Shown here one piece after another: positions 11,565 to 30,425 of a stretch of DNA of 64,000 nt. Below the pieces are notes generated by a model that was given only the letters and a program-made list of their open reading frames with translations, was not told the origin of the DNA and did not search any database. The DNA comes from Squalus acanthias (Eukaryota): the NCBI GenBank assembly GCA_030390025.1, contig CM059430.1, forward strand, positions 76,756,001-76,820,000, given 5' to 3'. The translations under genes were made by a program, and so were the position numbers. Position 1 is the stretch's first letter. Each line of letters opens with the position of its first letter.

Positions 11565-11609
11565 TTATGCCATCTGCAGCAGTCTATTTTCTATCGTCCC
11601 TTCCGTGGT
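11565..11609 (-). CDS. IgSF VJ-C1 receptor gene, probable terminal exon (TTEGTIENRLLQMA*)
   Basis: Acceptor attttacag; phase 0 matches the preceding 44-nt exon; lies in the non-repetitive island downstream of the TE-filled intron. Confidence 0.45.
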   Translation of the reverse strand, partial: TTEGTIENRLLQMA

Positions 11610-11918
11610 CTGTAAAATCGAAGCGATTTCCCGTTAGCTCATGACCTTAATTAGTCAGCAGAGTGCTGGATGAAACAGAGTGCGATCGGCTGTAGCTAAA
11701 TTGAAGATTCACGAATATGTCAGTTGAATAATGAATATGTCACTATCAGTGTATCATTATTGAAATTGCACAATTTTTCTGCTTGTTCAGAGCGTCTTAC
11801 AATTCACTGTGATGCGTAATAAAAAACCATTAGAATCCTTCGAATTCAAATAATTCATTGACACTGAAAAGCAGTACAACCTCTTTTGCACTCAGTGAGC
11901 AACTGCATTCTGCTATAC

Positions 11919-12504
11919 TCTGTATCTCACCCATGCTATTCCTGCCCTGGGAGTGTTTGATGCGGCACTGTAGAGGGGGCTTTACTCTGTATCTAACCCG
12001 TGCTGTACCTGCCCTGGGAGTGTTTGATGGGACAGTGTAGAGGGAGCTTTACTCTGTATCTAACCTGCGCTGTATCTGCCCTGGGAGTGTTTGATGGGGC
12101 AGTGTAGAGGGAGCTTTACTCTGTATCTAACCCGCGCTGTACCTGCCCTGGGAGTGTTTGATGGGGCAGTGTAGAGGGAGCTTTAATCTGTATCTAACCT
12201 GCGCTGTATCTGCCCTGGGAGTGTTTGATGGGGCAGTGTAGAGGGAGCTTTACTCTGTATCTAACCCGTGCTGTACCTGCCCTGGGAGTGTTTGATGGGA
12301 CAGTGTAGAGGGAGCTTTACTCTGTATCTAACCTGCGCTGTATCTGCCCTGGGAGTGTTTGATGGGGCAGTGTAGAGGGAGCTTTACTCTGTATCTAACC
12401 TGCGCTGTATCTGCCCTGGGAGTGTTTGATGGGACAGTGTAGAGGGAGCTTTACTCTGTATCTAACCCGCGCTGTACCTGCCCTGGGAGTGTTTGATGGG
12501 ACAG
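11919..12504. repeat. 67-bp minisatellite, about 8.5 copies
   Basis: Unit ctgccctgggagtgtttgatgggacagtgtagagggagctttactctgtatctaacccgtgctgtac with period 67 (11941, 12008, 12075...). Confidence 0.95.
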
Positions 12505-13021
12505 TTGCATTAATATTTCTATATTTAAGACTGGTAACCTGGTGCAGCTTTATTAATACAGCTGACAATGGGTTTATCAGAAAATATAAGCATATTTAAT
12601 CAGTGTCGAGCCCACCCACTGTGAGTAACCCGATTTTAAATAACTGAAAAAACTTAAAAACTATACAGAACCATTTATTAGTTACATTAGTATACAATAG
12701 TCAGTTTCGTAGTAAATTAAAATATATATATTTTTGAAAGCTTTTAAAATGTGCCCTGTGCCTAAAAGTTTAATTTTAAGAGCCTCTTTGAAGGCCCTTA
12801 AATGGGTGCAATTAGAGGAAACTCGCAATGATCTGAGGGCAGGGCCAGATTCTAGTGTGGTGTTTTTATAACTAGTGTAAAATATGGCTGAAACTAGATT
12901 TGCGCTGAGCGTAATGCGTGCTTAATATTCCTCTGGGAAAATGTTCGTGGCCGCCACGAGAGTTGGCGGTGTGACCGCCAACTCGGGTTAATGGCCACTG
13001 AAAATGGATGAAGCGCTACCC

Positions 13022-13698
13022 GGGGGAAATTCGCGCTGGGGGCAAAAGATTTTTACCGTGTAACGCTCTCCTGGTGGCGGTAGTGCAGCGTTCCAGCTTC
13101 CAACTGCCTCTGGAAATGAGGCTACGGAGTTCGTTAGGAGCTGTGGGAAATTAAAAGAGCAATGCATTAAAAGGCCAATGCCTTCTGAACTAATGACAAT
13201 TAAAATGAAGTGAAAAAATGCAGTTTTCAGCTCTTCCTGCCTTTTTTTAAAAAGTGAACTTTAAAAAGAAATCCCAAATGGGAGTCTTCAGCGCTTAAAG
13301 CTGAATTCCCTTCCGCACCTCAAAAAATGGGAAATGTGCTTCAGCATTAACACAAGTGGGTCAGCAAGCCAGGGACGGGGCTCCCACCGTCTCACATGCA
13401 GCACTCCACCTTTGTGCAGGGTGTCAACACTGCATGAGAGTTCCTTTACCCACAGGGGCCAAGAGGCCCTCCAGAAATGGGAGCACATCACCCAGGTGTT
13501 CACTGCCAGCAGTGTCGCCCCCACCAGCTCGCTCCAGTGCCAAAACAAACCTCATGACCTCAGACCACTGGCCAAGGTCAGTGAATGCATCTTCAAAAGC
13601 CGTCTCCTACCAACTGCAGCACTAGCCTCACACACTGCTCAATGCACAACACCCGCCCCCACCCCACCCCCCATCACTCACCTACCAACAATCTGTGC
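13022..13698 (+). pseudogene. Harbinger remnant with degenerate Myb/SANT exon 1
   Basis: WEHITQVFTASSVAPTSSLQCQNKPHDLRPLAK|gtcagt aligns with WREVAQSVSCRSMVPRTHVQCRKKFNDLTRVVR|gtgagt of the intact element; gggggaaattc end at 13022. Confidence 0.7.
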
Positions 13699-16303
13699 AA
13701 AACATTAATAGGAGTGGTATATAGGCCTCCAAATAGTAAAATAGAGGTTGGGGAGGGCATCACGAGGGAAATTAGAGAAGCGTGCAATAAGAGCACAGCT
13801 GTCATCATAGGTGACTTTAACTTACATATAGATTGGAATAGCCTAATCAGTAAAAATAATGAGGAGGAGGAATTCCTTGAGTGTTTAAGGGATGGTTATC
13901 TGGATCAATATGTCGAGGAACCAACTCGGGAACAGGCTATATTGGACTGGGTACTGTGCAATGAGAAGGGACTAATTAGTAATCTTGTTGTACGGGGACC
14001 CTTGGGTCAGAGCGATCATAACATGATCGATTTCTCACTCGAAATGGAGAGCGAAGAAATTGACTCAGATACTAAGGTCCTGAATTTAAACAAGGGGAAT
14101 TATGATGCCATTAGACGGGAACTGAGTAGGTATGATTGGACAACGTTCCTGGGAGGACTGGAGGTAGATAAACAATGGCAAGCATTTAAAGATAGAATGA
14201 CAAAATTGCAAAAATTGTTTATACCAATCTGGCATAAAAGGAAATCTAAAAAGGTGACTCAACCGTGGATAACAGGGGAAATTAGAGACAGCATAAAATC
14301 CAAAGATAGGGCGTATAAAATAGCCAAAAAAAGCGCCAGAGCGGAAGATTGGGAACAGTTTAAGATAGAGCAAAGGAGGACAAAGGGCTTAATCAAGAGG
14401 GGCAAAATAGCTTACGAAAGCAAGCTGGCGGAAAATATAAAAACTAACTCCAAAAGCTTTATAAGTATATCAAGAGGAAAAGACTGGTGAAAACCAAAGT
14501 TGGCCCATTGCAGTCAGATACGGGGGAATATATAACGGGAAATAAAGAAATGGCAGACCAACTAAATGCATACTTTGGGTCAGTCTTTACGAAGGAAGAC
14601 ACAAAAAACCTCCCTGGGATATCGGGAAAAATAGGGTCATTTGCAAAGGAGGAACTGACGCAAGTCAATATCTCTAAGGATATGGTGTTAAGGAAGCTAA
14701 AGGGATTGAAGGCGGACAAATCCCCAGGGCCTGATAACATGCATCCTAGGGTGCTGAAGGAGGTGGCCCTAGAGATAGCGGATGCACTAAGTATGATTTT
14801 TCAGAATTCATTAGACTCGGGAACAGTGCCCATGGATTGGAGGGTAGCTAACGTTACCCCACTATTCAAAAAGGGGGGTAGGGAAAAAGCAGGTAATTAC
14901 AGACCTGTAAGCCTTACATCAGTTGTGGGCAAAATGCTGGAGTCCATCATTAAGGATGAAATAGCGGAGCACTTAGCAAATGGGGACAGGATAGGACAGA
15001 GTCAACATGGATTTACAAAGGGTAAATCGTGCTTGACTAATCTATTGGAATTTTTTGAGGGAGTAACTGGTAAAATAGATGGGGGAGAGCCAGTAGATGT
15101 GGTGTACCTGGACTTCCAAAAGGCCTTCGATAAGGTCCCACATAAAAGATTAGCAGGGAAAATTGAAGCTCATGGGATAAAGGGGAAAGTATTGACGTGG
15201 ATAGAGAACTGGCTGTCAGATAGAAAACAGAGAGTTGGAATAAACGGCTCATTTTCTGAATGGCAGGCAGTAACAAGTGGGGTACCACAGGGATCTGTCC
15301 TGGGTCCCCAGCTGTTCACAATTTACATTAATGACCTGGATCAGGGAGTCGGATGCAGCATTTCCAAATTTGCAGACGACACTAAACTAGGAGGGGGGGT
15401 GGGCTCAGAGGAGGAGACCAGGAAGCTCCAGAGCGATTTGGACAGACTGGGTGATTGGGCGGATAAATGGCAGATGCACTATAATGTGGACAAGTGCGAA
15501 GTTATCCACCTTGGGTGCAGGAACGGGAGGGCAAATTATTATTTAAATGGCAATAAATTGGGAGAGGGGGAAGTACAGAGAGACCTGGGTGTTCTTGTAC
15601 ACCAGTCACTGAAGGCGAGCATGCAGGTGCAACAGGCGATCAAGAAGGCAAACGGTATGCTGGCCTTCATAGCAAAAGGGTTGGAATACAGGAACAGGGA
15701 TACCTTGCTGCAGCTGTACAGGGCACTGGTGAGACCACACCTCGAGTACTGTGTACAATTTTGGTCGCCTCATCTGAGGAAAGATGTTCTTGCCATGGAG
15801 GGGGTGCAGCGGCGATTCACCAGGCTGATACCAGGAATGGCGGGATTGACCTATGAGGAGAGACTATGTAGTTTAGGGATGTACACACTGGAGTTTAGAA
15901 GATTGAGAGGGGACCTCATAGAAGTGTATAAAATTCTGACAGGTCTAGACAGACTAGATGCAGAAGGAATGTTTCCCTTGGCGGGTGAGAACAGAACGAG
16001 AGGACATAATTTAAGGATAAGGGCTAAACCATTTAGGACAGAAATGAGGGGGAATTTCTTCACTCAGAGGGTGGTGAACCTGTGGAACTCATTGCCACAG
16101 AGGGCAGTGTACGCCAGCTCATTAAATATATTTAAGAGGGAATTAGATATATTTCTACAGGCAAAAGGGGTTAAGGGTTACGGAGAGAAGGCGGGGACGG
16201 GATACTGAATTGGAGGATCAGCCATGATCTCATTAAATGGCGGAGCAGGCTCGAAGGGCCGGATGGCCTACTCCTGCTCCTATCTTCTATGTATCTATGT
16301 ATG
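13699..16303 (+). mobile_element. Young CR1 LINE, subfamily A (5'-truncated, one frameshift)
   Basis: ORFs 13585-14490 and 14487-16208; near-identical to the 7384-10400 copy in opposite orientation. Confidence 0.95.
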
Positions 16304-29863: not shown

Positions 29864-30175
29864 CGTGCACAAGAAGCTTCGATCCGGCTCCTTTTATCAA
29901 CGTGTTTCCTGTGTATCTCACTCCACAGTAATAGGATCCGGAGTCTGGGACACGGACACTCAGGATCTGGAAAGAAGTCTCTCCGTTTTTCAAAGGAAAG
30001 AATCGTTTTCTGCCGTCAGAATCTGGTTGTATGAAGTCATTTTCGCCAAGTCTCCACCAATAAACTTTCACATCTGAATTATTCTGGACAGAGCTGGTCT
30101 TGCAATGGAAGGTAATGTCTGCACCTGCCATCACACTGGTGCTTTCAGGGGTTTGGGAAACTGCTGCGGGAGCAA
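29864..30175 (-). CDS. IgSF VJ-C1 receptor gene, V-set domain exon with germline J-like motif
   Basis: VSQTPES..V.AGADITFHC, VYWW, DSGSYYC, GAGSKLLV; acceptor ttttacag, donor gtaagc, phase 1/1. Confidence 0.93.
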
Positions 30176-30234
30176 CTGTAAAATATTTTTAAAAGTTAGT
30201 AATAAAATAGAAACAAAATATACATAGGCCCGCA

Positions 30235-30356
30235 TGGACAGATAACTAAATAGATAGATAGACATAGTTAGCTAAATAGATAGACAGAAAGAAAGCAAGG
30301 AAGAAAACAGAAAGATTGAAAGATTGATTGGAAGAAACAAAAGCAAAAAGAAAGCA
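30235..30356. repeat. (GATA)/(GAAA)-rich low-complexity repeat in intron 1 of the IgSF gene
   Basis: tagatagatagac...gaaagaaagcaaggaagaaaac. Confidence 0.75.
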
Positions 30357-30370
30357 GGACCGAATATTAC

Positions 30371-30425
30371 CGAAAATACCGTCGTAAATAATCCCCAAGA
30401 CCCATATGTACTGACACACAAACAT
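30371..30425 (-). CDS. IgSF VJ-C1 receptor gene, leader exon (MFVCQYIWVLGIIYDGIF)
   Basis: ATG at 30425 (acaATG), 55 nt, donor gtaata, phase 1, 195-nt intron to the V exon. Confidence 0.75.

What the first reader, a model, noticed from the sequence alone, without database searches (positions are those of the whole stretch)
11565..30425. Germline-joined, non-rearranging VJ-C1-TM immunoglobulin-superfamily receptor with antigen-receptor-chain architecture
Seen in sequence: six minus-strand exons with canonical GT-AG sites and compatible phases join into one 293-aa ORF (leader, V, C1, TM, short tail). The V exon carries its own J-like G-strand motif (YYCGVRYTGNTLIKGAGSKLLVH), with no intervening RSS or separate J segment, and is followed by a true C1-set domain (CETAEFYP...WYKN...YTCVVSH). 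Established: C1 domains are largely confined to Ig/TCR/MHC/B2M, tapasin, SIRP and B7-H6, and germline VJ domains occur in NKp30, CD8B and SIRP-type receptors. VJ-C1 genes have been proposed as relics of the pre-RAG antigen-receptor ancestor. Inference: this belongs to a poorly characterised cartilaginous-fish family of innate, antigen-receptor-like molecules, likely to be mislabelled by automatic annotation as 'Ig lambda-like' or 'SIRP-like'.
Basis: partly seen in the sequence, partly recalled or inferred. Interest (0 to 1): 0.8.

Follow-up and report, generated by a model that had tools for sequence, protein, structure and literature searches.

The report
Shark SIRP-like V-C1 membrane receptor
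This is an intact shark gene for a small cell-surface protein built like one chain of an antigen receptor but needing no DNA rearrangement; it belongs to a large receptor family of sharks, rays and chimaeras that has only automatic names.

Summary
Six minus-strand exons with GT-AG borders and matching phases encode leader, V, C1, TM and a short two-exon tail. Pfam calls the V exon V-set (9.3e-11) and the C1 exon C1-set (2.4e-13). One correction: homologues and a spliced contig place the leader donor at 30380, not 30371, giving 290 codons rather than 293.

A spliced contig from a public run joins leader, V and C1 of a close paralogue or orthologue at these borders.

The gene belongs to a large family seen only in cartilaginous fish, in all 65 named relatives checked. 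Some members have long tyrosine-motif (ITIM-type) tails, some a basic residue in the TM, and some short tails. That is a SIRP-like paired-receptor design.

This gene sits in a conserved shark-and-ray subclade with an uncharged TM and a tyrosine-free tail.

I found no RSS and no canonical F/W-G-x-G. By sequence and fold the family lies about equally far from Ig, TCR, UrIg2, SIRP, MHC and B7-H6. Descent from the pre-RAG ancestor is not shown.

The scan noted other VJ-C1 genes on other pieces of this genome; I did not check them.

The parts
30380..30425 (-). Exon 1: start codon and leader (15 codons + 1 nt, phase 1). 5' UTR is seen in a contig up to 30490.
   Evidence: Sequence. Homologue leaders match the 30380 donor. 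The X1 contig joint 30382->30177 is read as 30380|30175 with one variant base.
29864..30175 (-). V exon with in-exon J-like G strand (KGAGSKLLVH). 312 nt, phase 1 in and out.
   Evidence: Pfam V-set 9.3e-11 over the whole profile. AlphaFold model pLDDT 91 with the G strand split at G-A-G. Contigs of X1 and X3 stop at the acceptor.
26811..27119 (-). C1-set exon, 309 nt, phase 1 in and out.
   Evidence: Pfam C1-set 2.4e-13. Model pLDDT 88. Best folds are class II beta2, Ig C, UrIg2 and IgNAR C at Z 13.2-13.7. The X1 contig covers 26810-27120 with 6 differences.
26225..26341 (-). Connecting peptide, uncharged TM helix and Cys-rich juxtamembrane stretch (CCQLSDCK).
   Evidence: Sequence. Homologous to family TM exons. 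X1 record 1 covers 26223-26319 with 2 differences and runs on for 42 nt beyond the donor.
25781..25824 (-). Exon 5, 44 nt, cytoplasmic (GARGNEEGPRHVEER), phase 1 to 0.
   Evidence: Best of 871 candidate AG..GT exons against the P0165 tail, score 43 against 17 for the next separate candidate (the 29 and 25 in between are truncations of this same exon). No read evidence.
11565..11609 (-). Exon 6: last 14 codons (TTEGTIENRLLQMA) and TAA.
   Evidence: Sequence. Resembles the P0165 C-terminus TMKETVENRLL. No read evidence.
63910..63999 (-). TM exon of the next family gene upstream, cut by the window end, with an Arg inside the helix (LLISRCAWVGLVFL...).
   Evidence: tblastn with family proteins down to E 2.6e-05. 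Sequence with GT donor.
52217..52330 (-). Orphan TM-like exon of the family with an in-frame TAA (one base fewer than the 63.9 kb copy). Probable gene relic.
   Evidence: No V or C1 exon lies between 52.4 and 63.9 kb.

Best explanation
The locus encodes a type I membrane protein of about 290 residues. It has a split leader, a short V-type domain whose G strand is a J-like G-x-G bulge encoded in the V exon itself, one true C1-set domain, a 12-residue connecting peptide, an uncharged TM helix and a 30-residue tail without tyrosine. It needs no rearrangement. It belongs to a tandemly clustered multigene family seen so far only in Chondrichthyes. Family members share the V-C1 ectodomain but differ in signalling end. 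Some have long tails with ITIM/ITSM-type tyrosine motifs, some have Arg or Lys in the TM helix, and some have short neutral tails. That is the design of paired innate receptors such as SIRP alpha, beta and gamma. This gene lies in a conserved elasmobranch subclade of the short, neutral type. Inferred, not shown: it is a ligand-binding surface molecule that does not signal on its own (SIRP-gamma-like adhesion or decoy role, or a chain that needs a partner). Its V face diverges fast while its C1 domain is held constant.
For: Anatomy and domains. Folds: V pLDDT 91.0 and C1 pLDDT 88.0; the top C1 matches are all classical C1 domains. Expression and splicing: an 849-nt contig of run X1 joins leader, V and C1 at the predicted borders. 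It shows 22 differences in 277 nt of V, 6 in 311 nt of C1 and 3 in 109 nt of leader. X3 contigs stop at the V acceptor and the C1 donor. Family: HMMER against 1.84 billion representatives found 330 proteins at E<=1e-3. All 20 single-V hits whose names I looked up are chondrichthyan. So are 10 of 10 and 35 of 35 word-search hits. Tail types: alignment A1 and a rough count (29 ITIM-type tails among 94 family-like sequences of 208 held). Basic TM residues occur in P0019, P0166, P0031, P0075 and in the neighbouring exon at 63.9 kb. Subclade: SH-aLRT 97 in both the V and C1 trees of 63 rows, with sharks and batoids. Identity to the window is V 49-77% and C1 65-84%. Against the X1 transcript, 12 of 16 changed V codons are non-synonymous, against 2 of 4 in C1.
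Against: No protein, ligand or cell type is known. The runs are only guessed to be RNA, and the spliced contig comes from a paralogue or orthologue, not this exact gene. Exons 5 and 6 rest on homology. This copy lacks two N-glycosylation sequons that most of its subclade keeps (K for N in the J-like motif in 6 of 8; N-P-S for N-[ST]-S in C1 in 8 of 8), so some decay cannot be excluded. The ITIM, charged-TM and neutral classes come from crude pattern matching on automatic gene models. The likeness of the long tails to SIRP-alpha is judged against a recalled sequence, not a computed comparison.
Confidence: 0.7

Rival explanations
1. The family is the cartilaginous-fish co-orthologue of an already named non-rearranging VJ-C1 family of bony vertebrates, either SIRP or PRARP. 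The finding would then be a known gene family under automatic names.
For: NCBI names many members SIRP-alpha-like or SIRP-beta-like. A family profile aligns V plus C1 contiguously to human SIRP-alpha 2wng (107.4 bits) and hits SIRP-gamma at 99 bits. An Atlas cluster named SHPS1 is among the C1 look-alikes at 0.94. The long tails carry four spaced Tyr motifs of the type xxYAxLxL / TEYAxx, which by recall resemble the SIRP-alpha tail. Also by recall, chicken SIRP and the PRARPs are V-C1.
Against: SIRP does not stand out. UrIg2 scores 128.8 bits and the best light chain 94.5 in the same search. For P0003, light chains reach 54 bits, UrIg2 51 and SIRP-alpha 50.2. SIRP-gamma C1 is 19% identical at Z 12.8, tied with many others. 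No bony-vertebrate protein passed E<=1e-8 in the profile word search. No PRARP sequence or paper could be obtained.
Confidence: 0.35
2. It is a surviving relative of the pre-RAG antigen-receptor precursor, on the same lineage as UrIg and UrIg2, and closer to Ig and TCR than to innate receptors.
For: It has a split phase-1 leader, a single VJ-type exon and a true C1 domain, collinear with light chains. UrIg2 is the top non-chimeric PDB hit of both the C1 exon and the family profile. The best V folds are skate IgNAR V (Z 14.7, 29% id) and TCR V domains.
Against: UrIg2 scores are sums over three C domains of 20-24 bits each. All fold matches are tied within 1 Z. The next-best V relatives in the unbiased HMMER search that I named are reptile multi-Ig receptors (several with ITIM-type motifs) and a catfish NITR, not Ig or TCR. 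The F/W of the J motif is absent. UrIg and UrIg2 have 3 and 9 C domains (PMC12227049, sections 4 and 7 read).
Confidence: 0.12
3. It derives from a germline-joined shark IgL or TCR cluster that acquired a TM exon.
For: Automatic names say 'immunoglobulin lambda-1 light chain-like'. A lambda-type Fab light chain is the best single-domain PDB hit of the V exon at 33.1 bits.
Against: The 150th hit of the V exon in the representative library still scores 45.4 bits, well above that 33 bits. In A1, 19 of 20 members lack F/W before G-x-G (only P0088 has F-G-N-G-S); 15 of 20 read N-G-[ST] there and the window reads K-G-A-G. There is no RSS relic. The family, including ITIM tails, is present in both holocephalans and elasmobranchs. 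Not tested against shark IgL or TCR sequences, which I could not obtain.
Confidence: 0.03
4. This particular copy is a decaying paralogue, with the transcripts coming from its neighbours.
For: The spliced X1 contig differs by 8% in V and more than 10% in the J-like part. Two sequons common in the subclade are lost here. A relic TM exon lies 22 kb upstream.
Against: All six exons are open with canonical sites. End branches are short, C1 0.035 and V 0.10. An X3 contig matches V at 162 of 168 nt and an X1 contig matches the TM exon at 95 of 97 nt.
Confidence: 0.1

Closest known systems
SIRP family (SIRP alpha, beta, gamma; PDB 2wng, 4i2x)
   Same: Non-rearranging V domain with a J-like G-x-G G strand followed directly by C1-set domain(s), TM, and a family split into ITIM-tailed, basic-TM and short-tailed forms. 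V+C1 aligns contiguously.
   Different: One C1 domain, not two. No special sequence closeness. Binding of the SIRP ligand CD47 is unknown. This gene has no ITIM and no basic TM residue.
UrIg and UrIg2 of elasmobranchs (PMC12227049; PDB 9dmx)
   Same: Split leader, single-exon VJ-type domain and C1-type domains. Non-rearranging and found in cartilaginous fish.
   Different: UrIg has 3 C domains and is secreted; UrIg2 has 9 to 11 C domains. Both are single genes. Here there is one C1 in a multigene cluster with signalling tails. C1 identity to UrIg2 is only 26%.
PRARP genes (Fu et al. 2019, J Immunol; recalled abstract only, paper not held)
   Same: As recalled: non-rearranging VJ with V-C1 structure, TM and a possible ITIM. 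Not assigned to any receptor family.
   Different: As recalled, reported from bony fish to birds, not from cartilaginous fish, and as one or two genes.
Ig light chains and TCR chains
   Same: Leader-V(J)-C1 order, intron phases and domain spacing. The fold matches of V and C1 include them.
   Different: No rearrangement signals, no F/W-G-x-G, no connecting-peptide cysteine. It has its own TM and cytoplasmic exons.
NKp30 (NCR3) and B7-H6
   Same: Non-rearranging VJ-type V (NKp30) and V-C1 ectodomain (B7-H6). The B7-H6 C domain matches at Z 12.9 with 30% identity and NKp30 V at Z 13.1 with 23%.
   Different: NKp30 has no C domain. Neither stands out from the tied matches.

Membership tests
Rearranging antigen-receptor chains (IgL/TCR, including germline-joined shark clusters) | Split leader in phase 1, with V followed by a C1 domain and no spacer | tested here: met
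Rearranging antigen-receptor chains (IgL/TCR, including germline-joined shark clusters) | Canonical J motif F/W-G-x-G | tested here: not met
   The window has K-G-A-G. In A1, 15 of 20 family members have N-G-[ST]-G.
Rearranging antigen-receptor chains (IgL/TCR, including germline-joined shark clusters) | RSS heptamer-spacer-nonamer at V or J, or relics of them | tested here: not met
   0 sites in 25.5-31.5 kb. One site in the whole window against 1.2 in shuffles.
Rearranging antigen-receptor chains (IgL/TCR, including germline-joined shark clusters) | V and C nest inside IgL or TCR clades | tested here: inconclusive
   No shark IgL or TCR references could be fetched. Score ranks argue against it.
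SIRP | V with J-like G strand followed by a C1-set domain | tested here: met
SIRP | Two membrane-proximal C1 domains | tested here: not met
   One C1 exon here. Pfam finds one C1-set domain in each of the two homologues scanned, P0165 and P0003.
SIRP | Family holds ITIM-tailed, basic-TM and short-tailed members | tested here: met
   by pattern on automatic gene models.
SIRP | Closer in sequence to SIRP than to other V-C1 proteins | tested here: inconclusive
   2wng 107.4 bits against UrIg2 128.8 and light chain 94.5. For P0003, 50.2 against 54 and 51.
SIRP | Binds CD47; synteny with the SIRP cluster | not testable with these tools
The window holds no flanking single-copy gene.
UrIg / UrIg2 | Single-exon VJ domain with split leader | tested here: met
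   paper PMC12227049 section 7.
UrIg / UrIg2 | Three or more C1-type domains | tested here: not met
   One C1 exon.
PRARP | VJ-C1-TM with possible ITIM; orthology by tree and synteny | not tested
   Paper and sequences not held. The architecture matches what I recall of the abstract.
NCR3 / NKp30 | Single V domain without a C domain; Arg in the TM | tested here: not met
   A C1 exon is present and the TM is uncharged.
Tapasin / TAPBPL | Large N-terminal domain before the C1 domain | tested here: not met
   Only a 103-residue V domain precedes C1. Tapasin C1 matches at Z 11.8, below the ties.

The most novel reading that the evidence does not exclude
The family is a third, membrane-bound branch of non-rearranging VJ-C1 genes that predates the split of chimaeras and elasmobranchs. 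It would stand alongside UrIg/UrIg2 and be ancestral to tetrapod SIRP and PRARP. The conserved short-tailed subclade of this window, with its nearly frozen C1 domain, would be a chain that pairs through C1 with a signalling paralogue. That would make it a living model of a two-chain, pre-RAG antigen receptor.
Probability: 0.12. Interest if true: 0.85.

Novelty: new member of a known kind. Interest (0 to 1): 0.5.

Why it matters
Non-rearranging V(J)-C1 genes are the raw material in every model of how Ig and TCR arose. So far sharks have contributed UrIg, UrIg2 and NCR3. A chondrichthyan-wide, clustered V-C1-TM family with inhibitory, probably activating and neutral members would add two things. 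It would put a SIRP-type paired receptor system at the base of jawed vertebrates. It would also give a further set of VJ-C1 genes to place on the MHC-paralogon map. In practice, these genes carry six or more conflicting automatic names in public annotation, which can mislead counts of IgL, SIRP, tapasin and B7-H6 genes in sharks.

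Tried and rejected
Word-index protein searches reached only the family itself. The search with the C1 region of P0165 gave 4 hits from 48 candidates.

PDB sequence searches are swamped by antibodies. 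Whole-chain scores add up several domains, so they rank families poorly.

Fold searches confirm V and C1 but tie all families within 1 Z.

Papers not held: Fu 2019 (PRARP), Ohta 2019, Flajnik 2023 (UrIg), Dornburg and Yoder 2022, Kinlein 2021 (shark NCR3) and Flajnik 2012. What I say of them is recalled. Supplements are closed; table S1 and figure S1 of PMC12227049 might list related genes.

Ten literature searches found no description of this family. That covers the held library only.

Synteny with the MHC could not be tested. Earlier notes place MHC items on other pieces, which proves nothing.

A regex scan and tblastn found no further V or C1 exon in the window, and no ITIM exon.

I considered read-through of the TM donor (CK-GKEPPM-stop). 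I rejected it as the main form because the X1 contig leaves the exon at the donor.

The joined six-exon protein was never assembled, searched or folded. Every search used single exons by reference or natural database proteins, and the 290-codon length is arithmetic.

Full report
WHAT IS THERE. On the minus strand six exons join into one open frame.
- Exon 1 starts at ATG 30425.
- V exon: 30175-29864, 312 nt.
- C1 exon: 27119-26811, 309 nt.
- TM exon: 26341-26225, 117 nt.
- Exon 5: 25824-25781, 44 nt.
- Exon 6: 11609-11565, which is 14 codons plus TAA.
Every acceptor is a pyrimidine tract ending in AG and every donor starts with GT. Phases are 1, 1, 1, 1 and 0.

The leader has two phase-1 donors, at 30380 and 30371. 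Five close homologue models read GII[YC][EK] followed directly by V or A, as the 30380 donor predicts for the window's GIIYD. A spliced contig leaves the leader at 30382. So I place the donor at 30380.

All searches used single exons by reference or natural database proteins.

DOMAINS. Pfam calls the V exon V-set (9.3e-11, profile positions 1-109 of 109). It calls the C1 exon C1-set (2.4e-13) against C2-set_2 at 0.041.

AlphaFold models built on 63-row alignments are confident: V has pLDDT 91.0 and C1 has 88.0.
- The V model has only a vestigial C' strand and no C'' strand. Its G strand is broken at G-A-G, the bulge typical of J segments.
- The nearest V folds are skate IgNAR V (Z 14.7, 29% identity), TCR V-beta (14.7), NCAM2 Ig1 (14.6), TCR V-delta (14.1), CD79b (13.8) and NKp30 (13.1). 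All are tied within about 1.5 Z.
- The top 26 C1 matches are classical C1 domains, with C2-type domains (Rst, butyrophilin, nectin-like, B7-1) only lower, at Z 12.4 or less: HLA-DP beta2 (Z 13.7, 27%), Fab C (13.4), UrIg2 (13.4, 26%), IgNAR C3 (13.3, 29%), B7-H6 (12.9, 30%), SIRP-gamma (12.8, 19%), TCR C (12.6) and tapasin (11.8).

The TM helix has no charged residue, and the tail (GARGNEEGPRHVEER + TTEGTIENRLLQMA) has no tyrosine. No cysteine lies between C1 and the membrane, while three lie just inside it (CCQLSDCK).

NOT REARRANGING. V and the J-like strand are one exon. A scan for heptamer, 12 or 23 spacer and nonamer found nothing in 25.5-31.5 kb. It found one weak site in the whole window, against 1.2 in shuffles. 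The motif keeps G-x-G-S-x-L-x-V but has K where true J segments have F or W.

TRANSCRIPTS. Four runs were laid on 26100-30500. All four are only guessed to be RNA.
- In X1 an 849-nt contig covers 30490-30382 (3 differences), 30177-29901 (22 differences) and 36 letters too divergent to lay. It then covers 27120-26810 (6 differences), plus 116 nt that lie nowhere in the stretch.
- The lengths fit the predicted V and C1 exons to the base. The one- or two-base overhangs at each joint are what an aligner gives when the next exon starts with the same letters.
- The 36 letters read, by my hand translation, as ..NGTGSELVVH, the family's usual J-like motif. So the contig comes from a paralogue or an orthologue, not this exact copy.
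- Another X1 contig covers the TM exon (26223-26319, 2 differences) and runs on for 42 nt past the donor.
- In X3 (another study), contigs stop at the V acceptor (30010-30177, 6 differences, 34 nt beyond) and at the C1 donor (26810-26949, 3 differences, 22 nt beyond).
Splicing of leader-V-C1 and use of the C1 and TM donors are therefore seen in close relatives. Exons 5 and 6 rest on homology to the tail of the NCBI model P0165 (..GARRKEEESQHFEERTMKETVENRLL).

THE FAMILY. HMMER of the V exon against 1.84 billion representatives gave 330 proteins at E<=1e-3, 74 at <=1e-10 and 2 at <=1e-30. The best single-V hits are 230-400-residue proteins with the same leader-V-C1-TM plan.

I looked up names for 30 of the 150 listed.
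- The 20 family-type ones are all chondrichthyan: Heterodontus, Heptranchias, Carcharodon, Mustelus, Chiloscyllium, Mobula, Hemitrygon and Callorhinchus.
- The 10 multi-domain ones are 8 reptile receptors, 1 catfish NITR and 1 shark 'turtle-like' protein.
- Word-index searches with P0001 and with a 20-member profile returned 10 of 10 and 35 of 35 chondrichthyan proteins, adding Scyliorhinus, Pristis and Leucoraja.

- 'immunoglobulin lambda-1 light chain-like'
- 'tyrosine-protein phosphatase non-receptor type substrate 1-like'
- 'signal-regulatory protein beta-1-like'
- 'tapasin-related protein-like'
- 'natural cytotoxicity triggering receptor 3 ligand 1-like'
- 'H-2 class II ... beta chain-like'
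- 'CD276 antigen homolog'
- 'natural cytotoxicity triggering receptor 3-like'

For each species with several looked-up members, those that carry a contig record lie on one chromosome-sized contig. In Callorhinchus the accession numbers are consecutive, so the genes are clustered.

The window shows this clustering too. A family TM exon with an Arg in the helix lies at 63999-63910. A relic TM exon with an in-frame stop lies at 52330-52217. Stretches 1.7-2.6 kb downstream of the focal TM exon recur in the same order downstream of the 63.9 kb exon. That fits the family motif, but I did not read that DNA.

SIGNALLING TYPES. In alignment A1 the long-tailed members share four spaced tyrosine motifs..AYxxL[DN]L....ERTVYAQTK....[KN]LTYAALDL.. 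and ..TEYAE[LVI]...

A rough pattern count on the 208 sequences held found 94 family-like ones.
- 29 have ITIM-type tails.
- 17 have short or other tails, 3 of which are really long tyrosine tails.
- 18 were flagged for a charged residue near the TM. Several of these are false calls.
- 30 have no TM found, being fragments or other forms.

Clear basic residues inside the helix occur in P0019 and P0166 (Lys), P0031 and P0075 (Arg) and the 63.9 kb exon (Arg). This is the pattern of paired inhibitory and activating receptors.

By recall, the tail motifs resemble those of SIRP-alpha, and chicken SIRP is V-C1. Neither was computed here.

THIS GENE'S PLACE. Trees of 63 rows put the window's V and C1 exons in the same clade in both trees, with SH-aLRT 97. 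The clade holds Heterodontus (P0164, P0001), Heptranchias (P0165), Mustelus, Scyliorhinus, Pristis and Leucoraja, with P0170 beside it.

Identity to the window is 49-77% in V and 65-84% in C1. So C1 is held tighter than V even between sharks and rays. Variable V positions fall in the BC, C'-D and FG regions. Against the X1 transcript, 12 of 16 changed V codons alter the residue, against 2 of 4 in C1.

Clade members have short tails in differing gene models. One (Mustelus) has Lys in the TM. This copy alone has K-G-A-G for N-G-T-G, and N-P-S for N-[ST]-S in C1.

RELATION TO KNOWN FAMILIES. No family stands out.
- The C1 exon's best PDB chain is UrIg2, but through three domains of 20-24 bits each.
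- The V exon's best single-domain hit is a lambda-type light chain at 33 bits.
- The family profile scores UrIg2 128.8, SIRP-alpha 107.4, SIRP-gamma 99 and the best light chain 94.5.
- P0003 scores light chains 54, UrIg2 51 and SIRP-alpha 50.2.
- The Atlas gives only generic C1 clusters, one of them named SHPS1.

UrIg (VJ plus 3 C, secreted) and UrIg2 (VJ plus 9-11 C, TM) are single genes of different build (PMC12227049; outline and sections 4 and 7 read, passages searched). The MHC paper PMC10751288 (passages read) names UrIg, NKp30 and PRARP as the non-rearranging VJ genes linked to the MHC. It does not mention this family. PMC11599192 (passages read) lists CD79, NITR, SIRP, CD8, NKp30 and PRARP as the joined-VJ set.

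Orthology to SIRP or PRARP, nesting tests and synteny therefore stay open.

VERDICT. This is an intact member of a clustered chondrichthyan family of non-rearranging V(J-like)-C1-TM receptors that is not described in the literature I could search and is mislabelled in public annotation. Splicing is seen only in close relatives.

The best reading is a SIRP-like paired-receptor family, with this gene a conserved, non-signalling short-tailed member. The claim that it is a relic of the antigen-receptor ancestor is not supported by any specific affinity, but it is not excluded.

Noticed in passing
window 63910-63999 (-): TM exon of a neighbouring family gene, cut by the window end, with an Arg inside the helix. 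That suggests an activating-type paralogue directly upstream of the focal gene.
   Followed up: partly
window 52217-52330 (-): Orphan family TM-like exon with an in-frame TAA, one base fewer than the 63.9 kb copy. No V or C1 exon lies between it and 63.9 kb, so it is probably the remains of a lost gene copy.
   Followed up: partly
window 23605-24530 and 61897-63085: Stretches 77-82% alike, in the same order and strand, downstream of the two family TM exons. They may be a trace of the tandem duplication unit or a shared repeat.
   Followed up: no
window 13585-16208 (+), 18827-21035 (-), 22212-23447 (+), 54043-55194 (+), 56083-57045 (-), 57326-60025 (+): Many LINE copies fill the introns and spacers. 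The ORFs at 13585-14490 and 14487-16208 match the Pfam endonuclease (2.4e-11) and reverse transcriptase (9.4e-32) families and look nearly intact.
   Followed up: partly
window 11912-12505 and 16317-17064: Two minisatellites inside the last intron: a 67-nt unit in 8.9 copies (94% matches) and a 45-nt unit in 16.4 copies (93% matches).
   Followed up: no
proteins P0172, P0005, P0006, P0070 (family members of Callorhinchus, Carcharodon, Chiloscyllium and one of unchecked origin): An alternative TM type ending ..LLLTIII[VM][DE][HY].. after R-F-x-L replaces the usual G-C-A-G-G helix in some isoforms or genes. It may be a second kind of membrane anchor or partner-binding helix.
   Followed up: no
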